Positions 4,335 to 54,449 of a stretch of DNA of 64,000 nt are shown here, piece after piece (position 1 is the stretch's first letter; each line of letters begins with the position of its first letter). The DNA comes from Octopus bimaculoides (lineage: Eukaryota). The notes below the pieces were generated by a model that was not told where the DNA came from, searched no databases, and saw nothing but the letters and a program-made list of their open reading frames with translations. A program made the translations under genes and the position numbers. Location: NCBI RefSeq assembly GCF_001194135.2, contig NC_068981.1, forward strand, positions 119,880,663 to 119,944,662. The letters run 5' to 3'.

Positions 4335-4932
4335 CATCAATTTAAACATATATCTTGACGCAGAATAGACAGCCCAGAATAACGTCGCCGGTAGCCTATG
4401 TTCCACAGGGAGAATAGTAAGTTGACGTACATTGTCCAATTTGTCCCAGAATGTAAATTTGAAGGTTATTTGGTAGATATTTCTTGCAGGTCGAGCATCT
4501 ATAAATGGGCTCCATCGTTTGCTTGTGCTTATTTGATTACATTTGTATATATGTTTTCTTCAAGTGGAATTTGTTTTATCACGTGAAGATGGAAGATGAC
4601 AAAATCACTTGGGAATAACACATATCACATTCTTCCTGGACATCGCTAGCAGCTGAGAATATCCGATTCATTACTAGCAAGAATAAGAGTGCTCTAGTAA
4701 TAAAAGATTTCGGGTAATTGAGTTTTACTATCGATATCTCTAAATACCCAACAGGACATCTACAGTTCCCTTAATTGGTCATTAGAGTCAATCCCTTCTA
4801 TGAAATCAGTGCTTCTCCTGGAAACTAATTGGATCTTAACGAAAATCATTTCTCTTTATAATATTGAAACATATGCCTGTATGTGTGTGTGTATAGACTT
4901 TTGTGTGTATGTATATATATATATATATATAT

Positions 4933-5740
4933 NNNNNNNNNNNNNNNNNNNNNNNNNNNNNNNNNNNNNNNNNNNNNNNNNNNNNNNNNNNNNNNNNNNN
5001 NNNNNNNNNNNNNNNNNNNNNNNNNNNNNNNNNNNNNNNNNNNNNNNNNNNNNNNNNNNNNNNNNNNNNNNNNNNNNNNNNNNNNNNNNNNNNNNNNNNN
5101 NNNNNNNNNNNNNNNNNNNNNNNNNNNNNNNNNNNNNNNNNNNNNNNNNNNNNNNNNNNNNNNNNNNNNNNNNNNNNNNNNNNNNNNNNNNNNNNNNNNN
5201 NNNNNNNNNNNNNNNNNNNNNNNNNNNNNNNNNNNNNNNNNNNNNNNNNNNNNNNNNNNNNNNNNNNNNNNNNNNNNNNNNNNNNNNNNNNNNNNNNNNN
5301 NNNNNNNNNNNNNNNNNNNNNNNNNNNNNNNNNNNNNNNNNNNNNNNNNNNNNNNNNNNNNNNNNNNNNNNNNNNNNNNNNNNNNNNNNNNNNNNNNNNN
5401 NNNNNNNNNNNNNNNNNNNNNNNNNNNNNNNNNNNNNNNNNNNNNNNNNNNNNNNNNNNNNNNNNNNNNNNNNNNNNNNNNNNNNNNNNNNNNNNNNNNN
5501 NNNNNNNNNNNNNNNNNNNNNNNNNNNNNNNNNNNNNNNNNNNNNNNNNNNNNNNNNNNNNNNNNNNNNNNNNNNNNNNNNNNNNNNNNNNNNNNNNNNN
5601 NNNNNNNNNNNNNNNNNNNNNNNNNNNNNNNNNNNNNNNNNNNNNNNNNNNNNNNNNNNNNNNNNNNNNNNNNNNNNNNNNNNNNNNNNNNNNNNNNNNN
5701 NNNNNNNNNNNNNNNNNNNNNNNNNNNNNNNNNNNNNNNN
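4933..5740. other. Assembly gap (N-run)
   Basis: Other gaps: 8793-8987, 14322-14574, 15157-15253, 19135-19366, 27001-27118, 53143-53242, 57752-57761. Most abut microsatellites. Confidence 1.
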
Positions 5741-5773
<33 letters not shown>

Positions 5774-8792: not shown

Positions 8793-8987
8793 NNNNNNNN
8801 NNNNNNNNNNNNNNNNNNNNNNNNNNNNNNNNNNNNNNNNNNNNNNNNNNNNNNNNNNNNNNNNNNNNNNNNNNNNNNNNNNNNNNNNNNNNNNNNNNNN
8901 NNNNNNNNNNNNNNNNNNNNNNNNNNNNNNNNNNNNNNNNNNNNNNNNNNNNNNNNNNNNNNNNNNNNNNNNNNNNNNNNNNNNNNN

Positions 8988-9038
<51 letters not shown>

Positions 9039-14986: not shown

Positions 14987-15273
14987 CACGCGCGCGCGCG
15001 CGCATATATATATATATACATATATATATACATATATATATATACATGTATACATATATATACATATATATACATATATATACATATATATACATGTATA
15101 CATATATATATACATGTATACATATATGTATGTATAAAAGTGGTCTGATCAATAAGNNNNNNNNNNNNNNNNNNNNNNNNNNNNNNNNNNNNNNNNNNNN
15201 NNNNNNNNNNNNNNNNNNNNNNNNNNNNNNNNNNNNNNNNNNNNNNNNNNNNNTAAGATGTGTCGCCCTCTCT

Positions 15274-15307
<34 letters not shown>

Positions 15308-15457
15308 CACGCGCGCGCGCGCGCATATATATATATATACATATATATATACATATATATATATACATGTATACATATATATACATATATATACATATAT
15401 ATACATATATATACATGTATACATATATATATACATGTATACATATATGTATGTATA

Positions 15458-16699: not shown

Positions 16700-18175
16700 A
16701 CAATGTGGATATGCCCCTCTGTCATCCCGGAGAGGCAGTGTAGTTTTAGATCAAGTCGTGGCATAATGGACATGATTTTTTTCTGCTCGTCAACTTCAAG
16801 AGAAATGCATCGAACATCGCATAGCTCTTTACTAGGTATTTGTCGATTTTACAAAAGCCTTCGACACTGTTAAGAGGACCGTTCTCTGGACCATTCTTGG
16901 TAAACTTGGATGTCCACCTCAATTTGTCAACTTGTTTAAGCAACTTCATAGTGATATGAAAGCTCGTCTTAACTTCAATAGATCACTGTCGGAACCAATT
17001 TCCATCGATAACGGAGTTAAACAAGGTGATATTGCTACTCCAACACTCTTTTCCATATATTTTGCTGTAACTATCTAGAACGCTTTCCAAGACTGTGAAA
17101 TCGGTGTCTATATTCGCTTCAGAACCACAGGTAAGGTCTTTGATGTTAAATGCTTTAATGCAAAATCGAAGACATTCCAGGCCCTTATTCGTGAGCTCCT
17201 TTATGCTGATGATGTAGTTCTCGTTGCTCACACCGAGGAGGACATACAGGCTATATTGGATCTCTTCTCCAGAGCTTGTATTGGTTTTGGACTTACCATC
17301 GGTCTAAAGAAAACAAACATCATGTTCTCTCAGCCACCAAGCCAACTCTATGTGGAACCTAACATCTTTATCTAGGGTACAAGATTAGATGGGGATGACT
17401 CGTTCATCTATCTTGGCAGCACTCTCTCTAGAGATGGTTCTCTTGATTCTGAAATAAACCTGAGAATTGAAAAGGCCAGCAAAGCATTTGGAAGACTTGA
17501 AAATCGTGTGTGGTCTGATAGAGGTATCACCTTCAAAACCAAGCTTAGTATCTATGAATCTTGCATTTTAACGGTCCTCCTGTACTCTTCTGAGACCTGA
17601 ACGACATAGAAAGATTCCATCAGGCATGCCTAAGGAGGATACTGGACATCAAATGGAAGTCTTTAACACCAGACACCGTTGTTCTTCAGCAAGCTAACAC
17701 ATCCTGTATTGAAATGATCCTCATATGCAATCAGATGCGTTGGGTTGGGCACCTTGCTAGGATGCAGGATGACAAGTTGCCAAAGCAGTTGTTTTACGGG
17801 GAGTTGCAGCATGACAAACGTCCAAGACATGAAACTCAGAAACGTTTTAGGGATGCTGTCAAAAGCAACCTTAAGGCTCTTAATGTGAAAGTTGAAGACT
17901 GGGTGCAGATGACGCAAGATCGATCAGTTTGGAAACAAATGATTTACAATAGATGTAAAGCATTTGAAGCTCGAGGAATTGAAAATCTATCTTGAAACGA
18001 GTACTTCATAGACAGAATTTAATTACAATCCCAGATACTTTGCTGCTTAAAAATATTTATAAGATCTGCAGTAGAGTTTGTTTGTCAAGAGCAGGACTTG
18101 CTAGTCATATAATATCTCATGGCAGTATTTATTAATTGAAGAAATGGCCTTCTTCTGTAAAGAAGCGGCAATCAT
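16700..18175 (+). mobile_element. RTE-clade LINE, 5'-truncated RT and C-terminus with stops
   Basis: FVDFTKAFDTV, NGVKQGD, LLYADD, YLGS, MRWVGHLARMQDDKLPKQLFYGEL. Confidence 0.95.
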
Positions 18176-18632: not shown

Positions 18633-19720
18633 TAAATATAATGGATATAATATAATATAATATAATATAATATAATATAATGTAATATAATATAACGTAA
18701 TGTAATATAATATAATATAATGTAATGTAATATAATATAATATAATATAATGTAAAGTAATATAATATAATATAATATAATATAATATAATATAATGTAA
18801 TATAATATAATGTAATGTAATATAATATAATATAATATAATATAATGTAATGTAATATAATATAATATAATATAATATAATATAATGTAATGTAATATAA
18901 TATAATATAATGTAATGTAATACAATATAATATAATATAATATAATATAATATAATGTAATGTAATATAATATAATGTAATGTAATGTAATATAATATAA
19001 TATAATATAATGTAATGTAATATAATATAATATAATATAATAACATATAATATACTATAATATAATGTAATGTAATGTAATATAATGTAATATAATATAA
19101 TGTAATGTAATATAATATAATGTAATGTAATATANNNNNNNNNNNNNNNNNNNNNNNNNNNNNNNNNNNNNNNNNNNNNNNNNNNNNNNNNNNNNNNNNN
19201 NNNNNNNNNNNNNNNNNNNNNNNNNNNNNNNNNNNNNNNNNNNNNNNNNNNNNNNNNNNNNNNNNNNNNNNNNNNNNNNNNNNNNNNNNNNNNNNNNNNN
19301 NNNNNNNNNNNNNNNNNNNNNNNNNNNNNNNNNNNNNNNNNNNNNNNNNNNNNNNNNNNNNNNNNNATAATATAATATAATATAATGTAATGTAATATAA
19401 TATAATGTAATGTAATGTAATATAATATAATATAATATAATGTAATGTAATATAATATAATATAATATAATAACATATAATATACTATAATATAATGTAA
19501 TGTAATGTAATATAATGTAATATAATATAATGTAATGTAATATAATATAATGTAATGTAATATATTATAATATAATATAATATAATATAATATAATATAA
19601 TATAATATAATATAATGTAATGTAATGTAATATAATGTAATATAATATAATGTAATGTAATATAATATAATGTAATGTAATATAATATAATATAATGTAA
19701 TATAATATAATATAATATAA
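18633..19720. repeat. Compound (TATAA/TGTAA)n pentanucleotide satellite interrupted by an N-gap
   Basis: 5-bp periodicity visible directly; gap at 19135-19366. Confidence 0.97.
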
Positions 19721-35060: not shown

Positions 35061-35205
35061 TTATCCATCTTTTTGACAATACAATTCTTTTAATGCCTTC
35101 AATTCCTCTATTAATGTTTTGTTTTGATTTTCCAGAACAGATACTCGATTTTCCAGGCATTTCACATATTCTTTCTTCTTCCGTCGACATTCTGAAGCTG
35201 CCTCT
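35061..35205 (-). CDS. CREB1: CREB1/CREM-family bZIP factor, last coding exon (basic region C-half and leucine zipper)
   Basis: Acceptor ttttcag|A, phase 2. Reads (R)EAASECRRKKKEYVKCLENRVSVLENQNKTLIEELKALKELYCQKDG* with TAA at 35063-35061. Nearly identical to the CREB1 C-terminus as I recall it. Confidence 0.97.
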
Positions 35206-36730
35206 CTGAAAAACAGAAACAATTTTTAATACTTCAACAATCTAGTTTATTACATTGTTTTTAGACTAATGTTCTCCTAACAAGAAAGCAGAGAAAAAAC
35301 TGGATTATGAACTTGTAATCCAATATCTTATCCACCTGGCTTCTCCAAAATATGTAGCTAAGGTGCAAGTATGGCTGTTTGGGTACAGAGCTTGCATTGT
35401 AATCACATAGTTTCAAGTTATATCTCACTACGTGACTTCATGAACAGACATCTTCTTCTATAGTCTCAAGTTGATAAATGCCTTGTGTGTGTGTGGTGTG
35501 TGTGTGTTCATATTTGAGGCTAGGAGTCTGTGTGCCACTGCATGTATGTCTGTGCAAGTGCATACAAATGTTGAACTCCCTATCTTCACTTATTACCACC
35601 TGAGTGAAACTGTGGAGTAATGTTTACATTCTCTGTTGAAATTATGACTGGTCACTCTGCAATTTCATAGATAACAAAGTAAAAAAAAAAAAACCCTATC
35701 TTGGAAATAAGGATTGGCAACAGGGAGGGCATATGACCACGAAATGCTGCCTCAAAATAAGTCACCAGCAAAAATAGGTGTAAAACGATAAAAGGAATTA
35801 TACTGAACTAGGATGTTTTATAAGACTTTCTAATGTAACTTAATGCAACAGAATAAAGCATTTTAAGTATGTGAAGAGAAAAGGGTGTGAGTTATAAGCC
35901 ATTCAAATGTCCTGAGAAATAAGCATATTCAAATACTTTCTTTTCAGAAAAGTAAATAGCACTGAATCTAAGATACTTTGGATTAATATGTCCAAGACAG
36001 AAATCCTGTCCTTCTTCATATTTTGCACCATCCTCACTTAATTTCTATTTTTCAAGGGTTCTACATTTTTGTTTCAAAAATAACCATTTGATTCTAGAGA
36101 TAATGAGTCAGAAACAAATATAACAAAACTTTGATTGCTCATTCACAAACATCATGTCTTTGGTTCTTTTCCCATTTTGTTTATTCTTTTACTTGTTTCA
36201 GTCATTTGACTGTGGCCATGCTGGAGCACTGCCTTAAAAGTTTTTTAGTTGAAGAAATCACCCCCCCCCCCACGAACATATTCTTTGTAAGCCTAGTACT
36301 TATTCTAACAGTCTCTTTTGCTGAACTGCTAAATTATGGGCACGTAAACACACCAACATCAGTTGTCAAGTGATGGTGGCAGACAAACATAAAGACATAA
36401 ACACACACACACATATATATACATACACAATGAGCTTCTTTCAGTTTCCATCTACCAAATCCACTCACAAGGTTTTGGTTGGCCCAAGGCTATAGTAGAA
36501 GACACTTGCCCAAGGTGTCACACAGTGGGACTGAACCTGAAACCATGTGGCTGGGTAGCAAGCTTCTTACTGCACAGCCACTATGTTTAACATTTTATTT
36601 TATTTTTAAATGTAATTTCTGTTTTATTCACTAAATAACAGGCTAATAAAATTACAAATAGATTAAATTTTATTTCAAAACACCTTCAGCTATAACCAAT
36701 TTTGAAATAAACTTTATTTACAACTCTCAC

Positions 36731-36884
36731 CTGTTTTTTAATAGACGAAGTTCTCGCTTCCGAGCTGCTTCTTCTGATAATTGTTGAGGACTGGTAATTG
36801 GACTTCCAGTGGTTGCCATAACAACACCTTGAGGCAAAGATGTCGCAATCTGGTAAGCCTGCACATTTGTGCCACCAACTGTAA
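36731..36884 (-). CDS. CREB1: CREB1 penultimate coding exon (end of Q2 and start of basic region)
   Basis: ttttttag|TT...AACAG|gtgaga, 154 nt, phase 1 to 2. Reads (V)TVGGTNVQAYQIATSLPQGVVMATTGSPITSPQQLSEEAARKRELRLLKN(R) and joins the last exon in frame. Confidence 0.96.
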
Positions 36885-41329: not shown

Positions 41330-42540
41330 GAAACAGCAAAAGTGTAAGAGAGTGCAGAAGAGAGATGGTGTAACAAGAATATGAGTGTAGAACCTGGTTA
41401 GAAAAGTAAGGTGTGGGTGATGGGGGGAGCAGTAATACAGTGTGTACGGCAGTGAAAGCAAGAAAGGGGACTGAAAAACAATCTTAATATATGAGGGGGA
41501 AATGTGAAGAAGAGAAAGATACAATTAGAAGAGTTGTAGCTTGATTTCTTAGGGAAGAGTAGGTGAAAAGTGTGTTCTTACATGTGGGTGGGATACAGCT
41601 CTTCTAGCACTCAGTTTTGTAGACGGGTCTTCACGAGGACCTCATATCGCCAAACATCTCCATCTACTGTCATTTCCTCCGTGAGCCCCAGCATCCTAAG
41701 ATCAGTCCTTATCAGTTCATCCCATGTCTTCCTGAGTCTCCCTCTTCCACAGGTACCATCCACTTTCAGCGACAGGCACTTCTGTATACAGCTGTCATCA
41801 CTCATATGCATCACATGCTCAAACCAACGCAATATCCTCTCCTGCATATCACATTTAATCCCTCTTATGCCTAACTTTTCTCTCAACACAGTTGTGCTTT
41901 GTCGGTCATGCACACTGATGTTGCAAATCCAACAGAGCATACTACTTTCATTTCTTTCCAGCCTATGCATATCCTCTGCAGTCAGAACCCATGCCTCACT
42001 ACCATGTAACATAGCTGTTCTCACACAAGCGTCATACAACCTACCTTTCACTCTGAGAGAGAGTCCTTTTACTGCCAACAGAAGTAATAGTTCTCTGAAC
42101 TTCCTCCACCCTATTCTTATTCTAGAAACAATACTTTCAGAGCATCCACCACCCTTACTAATTTGGTCACCTAAATAGCAGAAACTATCTACTACCTCAA
42201 GAGAGCCTCCTGGGCATTTGAGAGAGTTTAAGTTCCTCGTGCTCTTGGTACTTACTGTTCCTGCACATCCGCCACACAAAAACAACCTTATCTGATAATC
42301 TTCCCACAATTCCACTGCATCTCTCATGCGTCCATAGCTTACACTTGGTGCAGTGCATGAAATTACATTCCACTCCTTTCTTACATATTGAACAGAGCCA
42401 TTTGCCACCTGGAATGAGAGTCATGTCTCCTTTCCTGCTAACAACTTTAATCTTAGCCCTTCAATTCCAGGTTTTGTTTTCAAACCTAGAACCTCTTCAA
42501 ATTCTGCAATAAGAGCAGAATCATCCGCATATAGTAGTTC
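40503..42540 (-). mobile_element. 5'-truncated RTE LINE with Cys-rich insert and long 3' UTR
   Basis: ORF 41611-42408: SFCYLGDQIS...GWRKFRELL...RLYDACVRTAMLHGSE...LRWFEHV...GRGRLRKTW. Upstream frame contains LYADD. 3' tail ends in (GAT)n. Confidence 0.93.
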
Positions 42541-43313: not shown

Positions 43314-43493
43314 CAGGAATTAAAAATTGTCCATCAGGACCTTGGGCATACTGTACAATAGTGGCAGTACCAGATGTTGTACCAGCACCAGATGATGGAT
43401 TTGCATTGGTCATTGTTAATGTTTGAAGACCTTGACCAGCCACTGTTCCTTCTGGATGTGTAGTTATTTGGATGGCACCAGATGGGACTAATG
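43314..43493 (-). CDS. CREB1: CREB1 Q2 glutamine-rich activation-domain exon
   Basis: attttag|CA...CCTG|gtaagt, 180 nt, phase 1-1. Reads LVPSGAIQITTHPEGTVAGQGLQTLTMTNANPSSGAGTTSGTATIVQYAQGPDGQFLIP; the GAIQ, QGLQTLTMTN and QYAQ..DGQ motifs match CREB1. Confidence 0.95.
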
Positions 43494-49732: not shown

Positions 49733-51008
49733 TTCTTGTCTTGGCAGCACATGATGGTTCTATGCATGCATCACCATCATTACAATGGTGCCATTCATTT
49801 TCAATCTTCTGTGAAAACATTACTTTACTTAGAAACAGGAGAGGGTTGGTGACAAGGTTATCTGGCCATAGGAAATCTACATTAATGAATACTGGTTGAT
49901 CTATGCAAGCATAGTAAAGTGAAAATTAAAATTATAATTAAAAAAATTATGATGAGGAGAGTTCACTAAAACCTCAGTATATCTTAAATATCTATCGTTT
50001 TAAATAACCAGTCATAATTAACACTGACAATGTTATATCAGAACATATTTTTTAACTTAAAAAAAAAAAATTTAATAAAATATATGAAAGAATATGAAAC
50101 TGAATATGCCTCTATGTATGGCTATATGCTGAATAAATCTATTACACTTTAGAGAAATAAAGAACAGCAAATGAAACTCAAAGATGATACTGAAGATGCC
50201 TCAACATTTGGATAAAAGGAAATATTGTAGAATAAAGGAGAGATGGTGAAAACCATCAAGCAAGAATCCACAGCAATTCTCTAAATAATCACAGATGAAA
50301 CTTTCATTAAATTCTTGTCTGCCATTCCTTAAGAAGAAAAACACTTCCAAGTCATGAATTACTATATATATGCTTAGATATAACAGCTATGTTCATATAT
50401 TTTAAAAAGTATTACTACTATTAAACATAGGTCAACTAAGTCATTGTTACTGATACAAAGTATGAAGAATCAAGTATTCAATAAAATAATTATTAAAAGT
50501 AGAGTAGCTAAGCCATATTATTGTCACAATGTTTGAAGAATAAAATACATAACAAAGCAACAGCAACAACAGATCATCAGTCTTTGATGACATTATGAAA
50601 ACAACATAAAACATGGGAAAAGAATGAAATTGTGAAAGAGTAACAGAATCACTCATACAAACTGACCTCAAAAAACTATGTTATCTAAAACTGCTTCAGA
50701 TTGAATGACAAGAATTTCTAGAACTGGATTCTTATAAAATCAGAAACTATCCACTTTGTCATAATATAGATGATAACTAAACAATCTACAGTTAGCTGAA
50801 TAGGTCCTAAATTAAAAGGTGCTTTGATACTAATTCATGCAGTATCTAAGTGGAATCCCAAAGACCAAATCCTGAGAATTGATATAGCTATGTTGCCACA
50901 ATCTTCCAAAGGTGTGAAAGTTCACTTTTTGGGAACACATCTAATTGGAGAGGTGAATATACTTACGCTATATGCAAACATATCAAACCACTTTAAGAAT
51001 ATACTTAC

Positions 51009-51032
51009 GCAAACCTTCCATCTGGCTGTATA
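51009..51032 (-). CDS. CREB1: Candidate 24-nt in-frame CREB1 microexon
   Basis: Long polypyrimidine tract then tag|TATACAGCCAGATGGAAGGTTTGC|gtaagt. Length is a multiple of 3 and it is open in phase 1 (x-YSQMEGL-P), matching the downstream exon. No homology support. Confidence 0.6.
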
Positions 51033-52366
51033 CTAAAATTTAAGAAGAGAAGAAAAAAAAGAAAAACAAAATAAACATTCATAAATTTTAAACTGCTTTT
51101 TTTTTTTTTTAGGTAAGTTAGTTTTAAAAAGATGTCAATAAAATCTATTTTGAATTAGTTTTGTATGTTAATCAACAATAGCAACAAAAAAAATTATCTA
51201 GGAGATTTTATTATCAAGTCTTCCTTGTGAATCAGTAATAGTTATTCAACATAAAGACAAAATAAAACAACTAGAATCATTTTTTTTCCCTCGGACATTA
51301 GTGACAAAATCTCTAATAATCACTGATGGTTTCTTGCTCAGATTTCAAGCAATATAGTAGTTGCTGCAAATTGTCACTGAAGAATTAGAATTTGATCTCT
51401 CAGGAATATATCAAAGCTCTAATTATCCTCTCTGACTGGAGAAACAGAGAGAGAAAAAAGCAAGATATGGAAACAGAAGACATGTTGACCCACTGAACAG
51501 AAAATCATTACAATACACCAATCAGAAGAATTTCTAACCAAGTAATTGATAAAATAAAATTAACAAAATAAAATGAATTAAATAAAATTTCTAGACAAGT
51601 GCATGGAACCTAAATATACCCTCAGAAAACTAATCATTAGAAACCTTTAATTGCAATTTATAAAGCAGACACAGAATTAGCAAACTAATTATGGAACATA
51701 TAAGATATACAGAGAAACTAAGAATACCTGAAAAACACTTATTTAAAATGAAATATCCAACATTTTTTTTATAAAAACAAAATATTTGAAGAACAACTTG
51801 TAAAGTAGAACAAAATTATATTATTCCTGTTAACTTAAACATTGTTGAAAACAACAGAAGACCAAGACCAATAAGACTAATTACAACTGAGAAAAAATAA
51901 TGAATACTTCAGTAAATGAACATTATGACAGAATCACAATATCTAATAAAAACAAAACCTGAAGTGAGAAAACAGGTTCAAAACTGACAATATGGTTTCG
52001 TAGAAGTGAAAAAGTATTCCAAAGAAATAATATTGATTTATTGAATGCGTTCATAAAATGTAACAAGTGACCAGTAAAACAACTTTAACAGAATGGATAT
52101 TATATATATATATACATATATGATACAAAACAGGTATGTATGTTAGCGTGAAAAACATGAAATATTTTGAGCCACAGACAAATAAAGCAACAAGGAACTA
52201 TATCACACATGCAGACAGCATTAATATTTTACTAGAAGCAAAACATCAACAATGTCAGAATTAAAATGAAGATAATTTCCAATAGTACCCCACTTACAAG
52301 CAAAGATATAGAAGCAACACACACACACACACACACTCACATCTCTCTCTCTCTCTCTCTCTTTAT

Positions 52367-52420
<54 letters not shown>

Positions 52421-53242
52421 TATATATAAATATTTAAATAAACTGATAACAAAAGCAAATGACATTATTTTGAAAGAAGAAACTGGTTTCCATGGAAATT
52501 GTTAGATAATTCTCATAACAAGCAATGATTTCATCTAAACTAATTTTTATCAAAGTAAACCAGCCATTAAGTTCTTGGTCTCTTATAAAAGTTTACAACA
52601 CGCAAACACTTATATACATACACAGAGAGAAAACAAAAGTGGAATGATTAAGATCTTATATCAACCATGCAACCTACTCAAGTCACACATAAATTGTAAA
52701 TTTCATTTTGAGAACATTATTAAATAAAACTCCTGTCTGTTGTGTCACTAAGTTTTTACTGAGAACATATTTTTCGAGGTTAGATGATTTGGCATCTATT
52801 TCTAGCATATAGGAGTCCACTTTTGCTGGTCATTCCTCTTATTTTTGTATGTAATATAATTTTAATCTTCGGAGTTTTTTAATATGCTAGACCACTGGTT
52901 TTAATTGATTAATATCAATTTCTACCCTTAATAATAAATAATAAATTTTAAATAATGATGTTCTCAAACCGGTAAATTAGCTGCAAAAATTTATTAACTG
53001 CAGAGTTATTTCCGGACTTAGCACGCCAGATTGAAGACATTTGAAAAGATACACTCAATGTAATTTGTAGAACTTTACACGTGCTCCCTTTTGGGTGGAC
53101 GTCTTGTGTCTAGTTCTGGAAATTGTATTTTATAAATCGACANNNNNNNNNNNNNNNNNNNNNNNNNNNNNNNNNNNNNNNNNNNNNNNNNNNNNNNNNN
53201 NNNNNNNNNNNNNNNNNNNNNNNNNNNNNNNNNNNNNNNNNN

Positions 53243-54165
53243 AGTGGTGCTTTTTCCTGGAACGAACCCAAACTGTATCTCATCTAAACTGACTCTCTCC
53301 CTAATGTGTTGGGCTATGACCCTCTCTGTGACCTTCATTACCTGGTCCAACAACTTGATACCTCTATAATTATTCGTATCTAATGTATCACCTTTACCTT
53401 TGTCGCAGTTGACTATGGTGCTGCTACACCAGTCATTGGGTATGACTCCTTCGTGTATCCCCTGATTAACTATACGGGTCATTAGGCTATAGCTGACACT
53501 GCCAGATATTTTGAGCATCTCTGCAGTGATTCCTGATGGGCTGGGGGCTTTCCTTGTCTTCATACTCTTGATCGCTTTATCTACTAAGGTACTGTCAATT
53601 AGGATAGCTGGTCCCTCTGTTGGGTCGACATATGGCAGGCTCTCTTTCTCCCATTCATTCTCTTTATTAAGCAGTCTTTCATAGTGGCGTCTCCAGACCT
53701 CTCTCTTTGCAGCCTCGTTTAGCGCGAGTGAGCCATCATCCAAGCGGACACATTTCTCACCTACATCACGATTCTTTCTCAAACACTGTCTTGCAACACG
53801 AAATACTTCAAGTCTTTGGTCCTCACGGCACAGAACATTGGCAAGTTTTTTCTTATCTGCTTCCCCTCTGGCTAAGTAAACCTGTCTCCTAGCTTCCCTT
53901 CTGGCAGTCTGATACAATTCCATGCTACCTCTGTTCTTCCCGTCCTTCCAAGCCTGTTTCTTTTGTCTAATAGCCCTGTCAATCACATTGTTCCACCACC
54001 ACATGACTTTGGGTCGAGAGGGGACTTTACACCAGCCACAGATCTGGTCGGTGGCTCTCAGCAGGTTGTCCCGTAGAAACCTCCAGCTGTCTTCCACGTT
54101 GTGTGATGCTATATCCCCTTCTACTTCGTCAAATGCTTCGAGTAATATGTCTCTAAATCTGAGAT
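53243..54165 (-). mobile_element. RTE LINE fragment (EN-RT linker and RT N-terminus), cut by an N-gap
   Basis: WWWNNVID...KAPSPSGITAEMLK...NYRGIKLLDQVMKVTER...QFGFVPGKSTT. Confidence 0.93.
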
Positions 54166-54449
54166 GGGAGTAATATGAAAAGGCTGAAAGTTGAAAAATC
54201 TTAGCTGTACATATCCTGGAATTCATATTCTGTCAGCAGAAGAGATTCGAAGTCGATTTGGAAAAAGTGGGATATTGAACTGGTGTATATAGAGTTAGGG
54301 TTAGGTAGTAATCGAAGAGAGAGAGAGGGGGAGAGAGAGAGAGAGTGAGACAGAGAGAGGGACAGGCAGTAAGTACATCACACGGGAATAATTCTTTGGG
54401 TTTTCGGTAACATAATTGAATGAGACAGCAAATGCTTAAATCATATATG

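What the first reader, a model, noticed from the sequence alone, without database searches (positions are those of the whole stretch)
50955..51075. Candidate CREB microexon with an exactly duplicated donor; the second donor adds a stop
Seen: a strong acceptor, a 24-nt exon and donor GC|GTAAGTATATTC. The same 14-mer (gaatatacttacgc on plus, 50997-51010 and 50955-50968) recurs 42 nt further on. Donor 1 inserts YSQMEGL in frame before the Q2 exon. Donor 2 gives a 66-nt exon reading ...L-RKYILKVV-TGA. Inference: a three-way switch (skip, include, poison) giving full activator, insert variant, or a KID-containing truncated protein/NMD target, analogous to the truncated CREB1c of Aplysia as I recall it.
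Basis: partly seen in the sequence, partly recalled or inferred. Interest (0 to 1): 0.8.

Follow-up and report, generated by a model that had tools for sequence, protein, structure and literature searches.

The report
Octopus CREB microexon with twin donors
This is a real and already annotated 24-base optional exon of the octopus CREB memory gene; a second, identical splice-donor signal 42 bases downstream is strongly conserved and could make a stop-containing version, but no transcript using it has been seen.

Summary
The window is Octopus bimaculoides, and the CREB/CREM-like gene lies on the minus strand. A 24-nt exon (51032..51009) follows a long pyrimidine tract and ends at GC|GTAAGTATATTC. 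The same 14-mer recurs exactly 42 nt downstream.

The 24-nt exon is not new. NCBI models and an O. vulgaris CREB entry in UniProt contain ...PAT-VYSQMEGLP-LVPSG..., and skip isoforms are also annotated. Include and skip are therefore already known.

The second donor is unannotated. It lies in the only strongly conserved intronic block between Octopus and Argonauta (about 264 nt). The second donor is identical at 14 of 14 bases, and both in-frame stops (TGA, TAG) are kept. Flanks of the other CREB exons lose conservation within 30-60 nt.

A predicted 11-bp hairpin occludes donor 2 but not donor 1. It has only weak statistical support and no compensatory changes.

No product of donor 2 is in the protein collection, and no RNA-seq could be queried, so the "poison" arm remains untested.

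The Aplysia CREB1c analogy holds only for the outcome. Published primers indicate that Aplysia CREB1 beta arises by exon skipping.

Verdict: a known microexon with a conserved, probably functional second U1-type site. Interest is moderate.

The parts
51033..51075 (-). Pyrimidine-rich tract and acceptor (…TTTCTTTTTTTTCTTCTCTTCTTAAATTTTAG) of the microexon
   Evidence: The acceptor-proximal part (about 36 nt) is identical in Argonauta; further upstream there are two substitutions and a 9-nt insertion.
51009..51032 (-). 24-nt cassette microexon with phase-1 introns on both sides. It replaces Ala by V-YSQMEGL-P, a net gain of 8 aa, between the KID-linker exon and the Q2 exon.
   Evidence: Present in annotated proteins P0122, P0123, P0124 and P0012 and absent from P0121 and P0125. 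22 of 24 nt identical in Argonauta.
50997..51010 (-). Donor 1 14-mer GC|GTAAGTATATTC (GT at 51008-51007). This is the annotated, productive 5' splice site.
   Evidence: In Argonauta it is GTGAGT, still a consensus donor.
50969..50996 (-). 28-nt spacer between the two 14-mers. It contains the first in-frame stop TGA (50983-50985) and the segment GATATGTTTGC (50974-50984), which is complementary to +1..+11 of either donor copy.
   Evidence: The +13..+42 stretch is 27 of 30 identical in Argonauta.
50955..50968 (-). Donor 2 14-mer GC|GTAAGTATATTC (GT at 50966-50965), an exact copy of donor 1. Its use would give a 66-nt exon (51032..50967). The second in-frame stop TAG lies at 50968-50970.
   Evidence: 14 of 14 identical in Argonauta. 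Predicted to be occluded by an 11-bp hairpin.
50888..51151 (-). Conserved intronic island around the microexon (about 119 nt upstream and 121 nt downstream)
   Evidence: It is the only strong colinear block between 25.5 kb of O. bimaculoides intron and 7.2 kb of Argonauta intron. A 260-nt span has no difference among three Octopus species. It is far more conserved than the flanks of the other CREB exons.
43314..43493 (-). Q2 exon (180 nt). It holds the acceptor that would receive donor 1, donor 2 or the upstream exon.
36731..36884 (-). Penultimate coding exon (…EEAARKRELRLLKN-R), 154 nt
35061..35205 (-). Last coding exon (rest of the basic region and the leucine zipper, with stop TAA at 35063-35061)

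Best explanation
Shown: the feature is the conserved, frame-preserving 24-nt alternative microexon of the single octopus CREB/CREM-type gene, and it is already annotated. It sits between the KID-linker exon and the Q2 exon. It is embedded in a roughly 260-nt island under purifying selection.

Inferred: the island contains a second, identical U1-type 5' splice site 42 nt downstream. I take this to be a working part of the exon's splicing unit.
- It extends the 24-nt exon to a 66-nt unit that U1 can define. A 24-nt exon between 18-kb and 7.5-kb introns is too short for ordinary exon definition.
- It then competes with donor 1. Splicing at donor 1 gives the +8-aa activator isoform.
- Splicing at donor 2 gives an mRNA with two in-frame stops. 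That mRNA would be degraded by NMD, or at most translated into a KID-only protein of about 145 aa without bZIP.
- A local hairpin between the spacer and donor 2 is predicted to keep donor 2 mostly masked. This would explain why donor 1 is the annotated site.
For: - Sequence and repeat.
- Include and skip isoforms are annotated in O. bimaculoides and O. sinensis (NCBI isoform models) and in O. vulgaris; the include form also falls in the UniRef cluster of O. vulgaris CREB C0KKU6.
- The window is 100% identical to the O. bimaculoides assembly.
- Both donors carry GUAAGUAU, complementary to the U1 5' end over +1..+8. This rests on the sequence plus established knowledge of U1.
- Conservation: only one strong colinear conserved block exists in the two flanking introns.
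- Identity to Argonauta by segment: microexon 22/24, donor 1 11/12, spacer 27/30, donor 2 12/12, falling to 0.78, 0.68 and 0.40 further downstream.
- The 31-60 nt bin downstream of donor 1, which holds donor 2, is 0.93 identical. The same bin for the other four donors in the gene is 0.37-0.55.
- Three Octopus species show no difference over 260 nt around the exon, against roughly one difference per 25-35 nt outside it.
- The TGA and TAG stops are kept in Argonauta.
- Hairpin: pair probability 0.86-0.99; dG -5.0/-8.0 kcal/mol at 37 C and -10.3/-12.8 at 18 C. The shuffled-spacer test gave p about 0.011. Donor 2 is the most occluded of the 33 GTAAGT sites in the window. The Argonauta change in the stem turns a G-U pair into A-U.
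- The donor-2 product keeps pKID and loses bZIP.
Against: - No transcript or protein that uses donor 2 was found. The 7-member 90% cluster holds none. Five exact look-ups of hypothetical products failed. A search with the tail peptide returned only one unrelated genomic ORF and did not even retrieve the known isoforms, so that negative carries little weight.
- NMD candidates are commonly not issued as protein models, so absence is uninformative in either direction.
- Conservation of donor 2 (14/14) is not significantly above the roughly 90% rate of the island core. It shows constraint on the region, not use as a splice site.
- The hairpin is short, AU/GU-rich and was found post hoc. Only two distinct sequences exist, and there are no compensatory double changes. 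The 201-nt region as a whole folds no better than shuffles (z = +1.08).
- An in-frame stop within 14 AT-rich codons is expected by chance about two times in three (my estimate).
Confidence: 0.5

Rival explanations
1. Donor 2 is an intronic splicing enhancer or decoy only. U1 or another factor binds it and promotes (or represses) recognition of the 24-nt exon, but it is essentially never the site of cleavage, so no poison isoform exists in vivo.
For: Only donor 1 appears in annotated products, and no donor-2 product exists in the collection. Donor 2 is predicted to be buried in a hairpin. Conserved intronic flanks of about 100-150 nt are typical of regulated microexons (my knowledge of the microexon literature). 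The conservation continues about 65 nt past donor 2, as expected of a general regulatory flank.
Against: A perfect GUAAGUAU site 42 nt downstream of an identical one, and closer to the next acceptor, would be hard for the spliceosome to ignore completely. This follows from the established behaviour of tandem consensus 5' splice sites. The predicted hairpin is weak at 37 C (-5 kcal/mol). The two in-frame stops are retained, though that is weak evidence.
Confidence: 0.3
2. One reading: a regulated three-way switch whose third output is a functional truncated KID-containing protein (a CREB1c-like modulator), possibly with a downstream-initiated bZIP repressor.
For: The donor-2 ORF keeps pKID and loses bZIP. 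Truncated or repressor CREB products made by alternative splicing are documented in Aplysia (PMC5772390), Lymnaea (PMC3105992) and mammalian testis (references in PMC9331954). The site is conserved.
Against: There is no evidence that the transcript exists, and none for a protein. The first stop lies about 350 nt upstream of the last exon junction, which favours decay over translation. The Aplysia precedent uses a different mechanism, exon skipping with a frameshift. An annotated truncated isoform already exists by another route (P0012, read-through of the donor at 36730).
Confidence: 0.12
3. The duplicate is a relic of an old tandem duplication of about 42 nt inside a conserved regulatory island. 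The island is constrained for other reasons (binding sites for splicing regulators), and the second donor-like sequence has no role of its own.
For: The two 42-nt units show faint residual similarity beyond the 14-mer (TTGATATGTTTGC versus TTAGATGTGTTCC, by eye). The 14/14 conservation is compatible with the roughly 90% background of the island core.
Against: The rest of the two units has diverged to near-random similarity, while the 14-mers stay identical within Octopus and 13/14 between the two copies in Argonauta. That argues for selection on both copies for the same sequence.
Confidence: 0.08

Closest known systems
Annotated octopus CREB/CREM isoforms with and without the 24-nt exon (NCBI XP_029638655 and others = 296 aa; XP_029638680 and others = 288 aa; UniProt C0KKU6, O. 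vulgaris CREB)
   Same: Same exon, same acceptor and donor 1. The insert V-YSQMEGL-P is identical in O. bimaculoides, O. sinensis and O. vulgaris.
   Different: None of the annotated products uses donor 2. The duplicated donor and the conserved island are not part of any annotation I could see.
Mammalian CREB1 stop-containing alternative exons (exon W/Y of Waeber and Habener; gamma, psi and omega of Ruppert et al. 1992), expressed in testis
   Same: A CREB-family gene in which an optional exon carrying in-frame stops truncates the protein before the bZIP. These are cited in PMC9331954 and PMC3240583. That they lead to inhibitory bZIP-only products by re-initiation is from my own memory (Walker et al. 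1996).
   Different: They are separate cassette exons, not an extension of a coding microexon through a duplicated donor. There is no sequence relationship. Their exact intron positions could not be checked, because Ruppert 1992 is not held. They are demonstrated by cDNA; the octopus case is not.
Aplysia CREB1 beta mRNA giving CREB1c (cytoplasmic, KID-containing) and CREB1b (repressor), Bartsch et al. 1998
   Same: A molluscan CREB1 gene. Alternative splicing interrupts the frame after the phosphorylation box, giving a truncated KID-containing product (PMC5772390).
   Different: The beta-specific primer GAAGGCCTTCGTACAG|ATGTCC joins RRPSYR to the start of the (Y)VQT exon (with P0016). This means the KILNEL… exon is skipped and the frame shifts. 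No exon is added and no tandem donor is involved. This is my inference from primer and protein sequences; the genomic locus could not be fetched.
Neuronal microexons with conserved intronic control regions, such as the 18-nt c-src N1 exon
   Same: A very short, frame-preserving cassette exon, a CU-rich upstream tract, and a highly conserved downstream intronic region within about 120 nt. The comparison itself is from my knowledge of that literature.
   Different: The N1 downstream control sequence consists of protein-binding motifs, not a duplicated 5' splice site. No UGCAUG and no UGC next to the acceptor is present here. Tissue specificity of the octopus exon is unknown.
Unproductive splicing coupled to NMD through alternative 5' splice sites or poison exons (AS-NMD)
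   Same: An alternative donor adds sequence with a premature stop far upstream of the last junction. The surrounding intron is unusually conserved.
   Different: Use of the site and NMD sensitivity are not shown. The rules of NMD in cephalopods are not established.

Membership tests
CREB/CREM/ATF1 bZIP transcription factor gene | pKID domain with the RRPSY phospho-acceptor motif | tested here: met
   PF02173 pKID, E = 2.3e-15, residues 67-97 of P0122. RRPSYRKILNEL is present. The exons that encode it lie outside the window.
CREB/CREM/ATF1 bZIP transcription factor gene | C-terminal bZIP with the CREB-type basic region | tested here: met
   PF00170 bZIP_1, E = 8.7e-18. Exons at 36731-36884 and 35061-35205 are 91% identical to human CREB1 over the bZIP.
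Alternative cassette microexon | Very short exon (27 nt or less) with AG/GT borders that preserves the reading frame | tested here: met
   24 nt, ttttag|…|GTAAGT, phase-1 introns on both sides
Alternative cassette microexon | Both inclusion and skipping products documented | tested here: met
   P0122, P0123 and P0124 (include) versus P0121 and P0125 (skip), in NCBI and ENA annotations of three Octopus species
Alternative cassette microexon | Conservation of the exon and its flanking introns across species | tested here: met
   A 264-nt island between Octopus and Argonauta that exceeds the flanks of all other exons of the gene
Alternative 5' splice site / poison exon (AS-NMD) | A second competent 5' splice site whose use introduces a premature stop more than 50-55 nt upstream of the last exon junction | tested here: met
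   An identical GC|GTAAGTATATTC. TGA lies at exon nt 48-50, and 16+180+154 = about 350 nt separate it from the last junction. This is competence by sequence only.
Alternative 5' splice site / poison exon (AS-NMD) | Transcripts spliced at the alternative site exist | not testable with these tools
   No RNA-seq or transcript database for cephalopods was available. Indirect look-ups were negative.
Alternative 5' splice site / poison exon (AS-NMD) | The isoform is stabilised when NMD is blocked | not testable with these tools
   Needs an experiment
Aplysia CREB1-beta type truncation | Same splicing event (homologous exon and mechanism) | tested here: not met
   The beta primer spans RRPSYR|(Y)VQT, meaning an exon is skipped with a frameshift. 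The octopus event would add 42 nt after a microexon one intron further downstream.
Structure-gated splice-site choice (competing RNA hairpins) | A stable, evolutionarily supported stem that occludes one splice site | tested here: inconclusive
   An 11-bp stem predicted with probability 0.86-0.99 in both species. p is about 0.01-0.03 against shuffles and against other GTAAGT sites. Only one-sided compatible changes occur, in two distinct sequences. The region-wide z-score is not significant.

The most novel reading that the evidence does not exclude
Two identical 5' splice sites share one complementary 'selector' segment placed between them. The segment normally masks the downstream site in a marginally stable hairpin. 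Melting or remodelling of this hairpin (by temperature in an ectotherm, by helicases or RNA-binding proteins, or by transcription speed) would shift CREB pre-mRNA from the +8-aa activator isoform to a stop-containing isoform. This would be a conserved octopod device, present in both Octopus and Argonauta, that tunes the dose of the CREB activator.
Probability: 0.12. Interest if true: 0.7.

Novelty: new member of a known kind. Interest (0 to 1): 0.35.

Why it matters
CREB is the central transcription switch for long-term memory, and its splice isoforms set the activator/repressor balance in Aplysia, Lymnaea, Drosophila and mammals. Octopuses are the invertebrates with the most elaborate learning, yet their CREB isoform repertoire is known only from automatic annotation.

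If the conserved second donor is used, octopods would have their own route to unproductive or truncated CREB transcripts. That route would be built on a microexon and would be mechanistically different from the Aplysia one. If it is only an auxiliary U1 site, it is a clean natural example of how a 24-nt exon between 18-kb and 7.5-kb introns gets recognised. Either way the test is a simple RT-PCR or a junction count.

Tried and rejected
- Search for donor-2 products. The 90% cluster of the octopus protein holds 7 members, none with the RKYILKVV tail. Exact look-up of five hypothetical products, including the Argonauta versions, found nothing.
- Homology search with the exon-C + microexon + tail peptide returned only P0127, an ORF on a 1.1-kb Logan contig (SRR11869384) that reads from intron through exon C into the next intron, from a closely related octopus. 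This search did not even retrieve the known isoforms, so it is a weak negative.
- Two DNA scans of metagenome contigs, one for the microexon core and one for the tandem 14-mers, found nothing.
- I tried to fish genomic contigs of other cephalopods with the 70-aa antisense ORF that spans the island. There were no candidates.
- No decapodiform or Nautilus genomic locus was reachable. P0002 and P0003 are transcript-derived and lack the insert.
- The Babylonia, Pomacea and Aplysia loci could not be fetched.
- Known RNA family in the island: none in Rfam.
- Global RNA structure of 201 nt: not better than shuffles, so rejected as an explanation of the island.
- Homology between the octopus microexon and the 36-nt insert of a gastropod transcript at the same junction: no nucleotide similarity, so rejected.
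- A U1-like ACTTACC motif about 90 nt upstream of the exon could pair with the donors, but it is not conserved in Argonauta, so it was dropped.
- Ruppert 1992 and Sadamoto 2010 are not held.
Full report
**1. What is in the sequence**

On the minus strand the window reads ...ttcttctcttcttaaattttag|TATACAGCCAGATGGAAGGTTTGC|GTAAGTATATTCTTAAAGTGGTTTGATATGTTTGCATATAGC|GTAAGTATATTCACC....
- The 24-nt exon is 51032..51009.
- The 14-mer GCGTAAGTATATTC occurs exactly twice in the 64 kb, 42 nt apart (plus coordinates 50997-51010 and 50955-50968). None of 100 dinucleotide-preserving shuffles gave two matches.
- Joined to the upstream exon (which ends ...CCT GCA ACA G) and to the Q2 exon (which starts CA TTA GTC at 43493), donor 1 gives PAT-V-YSQMEGL-P-LVPSG.
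- Donor 2 gives a 66-nt exon reading V-YSQMEGL-RKYILKVV-stop, with a second in-frame TAG at its end.

**2. Gene and organism**

- A tblastn with human CREB1 (written from memory), and then with the octopus proteins, places three coding exons of a CREB/CREM-type gene on the minus strand. They are the Q2 exon 43493-43314, an exon at 36884-36731, and the last bZIP exon at 35205-35061.
- The window is 100% identical to the O. bimaculoides chromosome assembly GCA_001194135.2 (locus L002).
- In that locus the KID exons lie 18 kb or more upstream of the microexon, at about window coordinate 69045, which is outside the window.
- Pfam confirms pKID plus bZIP for the full protein.

**3. The microexon is already known**

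The best database hits include NCBI models from O. bimaculoides, O. sinensis and O. vulgaris.
- P0122 (296 aa) is isoform X1 in O. sinensis and O. vulgaris models. It belongs to the UniRef cluster named after UniProt C0KKU6, 'cAMP responsive element binding protein' of O. vulgaris. It contains ...IQYQPATVYSQMEGLPLVPSG....
- P0121 (288 aa) has ...IQYQPATALVPSG....

The skip and include arms of the proposed switch are therefore annotated in three species. No annotated product uses donor 2.

**4. Conservation**

Loci of O. sinensis, O. vulgaris and Argonauta hians (a different family of incirrate octopods) were fetched.
- Between O. bimaculoides and Argonauta, the two introns flanking the microexon (25.5 kb versus 7.2 kb) share one strong colinear block. 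It is 264 nt long and centred on the microexon (window 50888-51151). The other hits are weak and not colinear.
- Identity within the block:

| Segment | Identity |
|---|---|
| Last 60 nt of the upstream intron | 0.80 (lowered by one 9-nt insertion in Argonauta) |
| Microexon | 22/24 (one synonymous change, one Gly to Ser) |
| Donor 1 | 11/12 (GTAAGT to GTGAGT) |
| Spacer | 27/30 |
| Donor 2 | 12/12 (14/14 for the whole repeat) |
| Further downstream | 0.78, then 0.68, then 0.40 |

- Both in-frame stops are retained.
- For comparison, the flanks of the other exons of the same gene fall to 0.33-0.68 identity in the 31-60 nt bin. The flank downstream of the microexon stays at 0.87, 0.93, 0.80 and 0.67 over 120 nt.
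- Among the three Octopus species there is no difference over 260 nt (-73 to +186 relative to the exon start). Outside that span, differences occur about every 25-35 nt.

The region holding the second donor is thus under clear purifying selection. This shows constraint, not use as a splice site. Given about 90% identity in the island core, 14/14 is not exceptional on its own.

**5. Are the two donors equivalent?**

- By sequence, yes. Both are GUAAGUAU at +1..+8, fully complementary to the 5' end of U1 snRNA (established knowledge). Both have a poor exonic side (UGC and AGC).
- From what is known of tandem consensus donors, the downstream one should compete well. Yet the annotated isoforms use donor 1.
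- Folding offers a possible reason. The spacer segment GAUAUGUUUGC (50974-50984) pairs with +1..+11 of donor 2 in an 11-bp hairpin with a 7-nt loop.

| Hairpin property | O. bimaculoides | Argonauta |
|---|---|---|
| Pair probability at 37 C | 0.86 | 0.97 |
| Pair probability at 18 C | 0.99 | 0.99 |
| dG at 37 C (kcal/mol) | -5.0 | -8.0 |
| dG at 18 C (kcal/mol) | -10.3 | -12.8 |

- The unpaired probability is 0.08 for donor 2 and 0.38 for donor 1.
- Shuffling the spacer gives a donor 2 at least as occluded in 1.1% of 1000 trials.
- Donor 2 ranks first of the 33 GTAAGT sites in the window for occlusion.
- The same segment can also pair with donor 1, with a 13-nt loop and a dG of -4.2 kcal/mol.
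- The Argonauta substitutions in these segments keep pairing (G-U to A-U, and A-U to G-U). They are one-sided, and only two distinct sequences exist, so there is no covariation statistic.
- The 201-nt region as a whole is not unusually structured (z = +1.08), and Rfam finds nothing.

I treat the hairpin as a suggestive lead found post hoc.

**6. Evidence for or against use of donor 2**

Nothing direct could be obtained.
- The 90% cluster has seven members, none with the tail.
- Five hypothetical products were looked up exactly and are absent.
- A peptide search and two metagenome DNA scans found nothing relevant.
- NMD candidates are usually not released as protein models, and the collection evidently holds no transcript-derived octopus CREB proteins. 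These negatives therefore weigh little.
- If donor 2 is used, the first stop lies 16+180+154 = about 350 nt upstream of the last exon junction. The ORF would encode 145 aa with pKID and no bZIP.

**7. Comparison with what is known**

- Aplysia: CREB1 alpha and beta mRNAs, and the CREB1a, b and c proteins, are described in PMC5772390, citing Bartsch 1998. Its beta-specific forward primer GAAGGCCTTCGTACAG|ATGTCC joins RRPSYR to the ATGTCC that starts the (Y)VQT exon. The alpha-specific primer spans GHDS|YVQT (with the Aplysia protein). So the Aplysia truncation comes from skipping the KILNEL… exon with a frameshift. It is a different event, in a different intron, from the one proposed here. The analogy concerns the outcome only.
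- Lymnaea makes activator and repressor proteins from seven splice variants (PMC3105992).
- Mammalian testis CREB transcripts carry optional exons with in-frame stops (references in PMC9331954 and PMC3240583). These are the nearest precedent for a poison exon in a CREB gene, but they are independent cassette exons.
- The KID-linker|Q2 junction is a hot spot of variation in molluscs. A gastropod transcript has an unrelated 36-nt insert there, and oyster isoforms use alternative acceptors.

**8. Verdict**

- The microexon is real and already annotated.
- The second donor is a genuine, conserved and unannotated element. Its most likely role is as a working U1-type site of the microexon's splicing unit, aiding definition of a 24-nt exon and occasionally or conditionally yielding a stop-containing 66-nt exon.
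- Novelty is modest: a new member of known kinds (alternative 5' splice site, poison-exon logic, microexon control region).
- The decisive test, a junction count or RT-PCR, is easy.

Noticed in passing
window 36727-36732 (minus strand): The donor of the penultimate coding exon reads ...AAC AG|GTGAGA, so read-through gives AGG TGA, an immediate stop. NCBI isoform X3 of O. bimaculoides (P0012, 249 aa, ends ...LLKNR) is exactly this product. It is a truncated CREB that lacks half the basic region and the zipper, so an annotated truncated KID-containing isoform already exists by another route.
   Followed up: partly
L006 (Logan SRR26439019 transcript), about nt 445-480; proteins P0009 versus P0004: A gastropod CREB transcript carries a 36-nt in-frame insert (V-ARRADGIEYVT) at the same KID-linker|Q2 junction. 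It has no nucleotide similarity to the octopus microexon. Oyster isoforms (P0027, P0034) use alternative acceptors at this junction. The junction looks like a recurrent site of isoform variation in molluscs.
   Followed up: partly
L002 3001-3110 (outside the window); protein P0124: An alternative first exon about 27 kb upstream of the main start replaces Q1 and the RRPSY half of the KID with an unrelated 36-aa N-terminus joined to KILNEL…. The resulting isoform lacks the PKA phospho-acceptor. It is annotated in O. bimaculoides and O. sinensis.
   Followed up: no
window 53075-54226 (-), 41611-42408 (-), about 17400-17600 (+): ORFs that look by eye like fragments of retroelement (LINE-type) reverse transcriptase lie inside the CREB introns and downstream of the gene. 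They were not run against any family library.
   Followed up: no
window about 4930-5760, 8800-9000, 15150-15320, 19135-19365 and a short run near 53100: Runs of N (assembly gaps) are flanked by AT-rich or simple repeats, including (ATATA)n and (ATAAT)n arrays at 18645-19720. They explain the low-GC bins in the composition profile.
   Followed up: no
L002 31698-31780 versus L004 3877-3959 (exon B, KID part 1; outside the window): The first 30 nt of both introns flanking exon B are 90% identical between Octopus and Argonauta. This is more than for the other constitutive exons, which may reflect regulated use of this exon.
   Followed up: no
L005 (Logan SRR11869384 contig, 1135 nt): A contig from another octopus-like species holds exon C with one amino-acid difference (P to S). 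Its gene call reads through the exon-C donor into the intron, as does the old UniProt entry A0A0L8I062 of O. bimaculoides.
   Followed up: no
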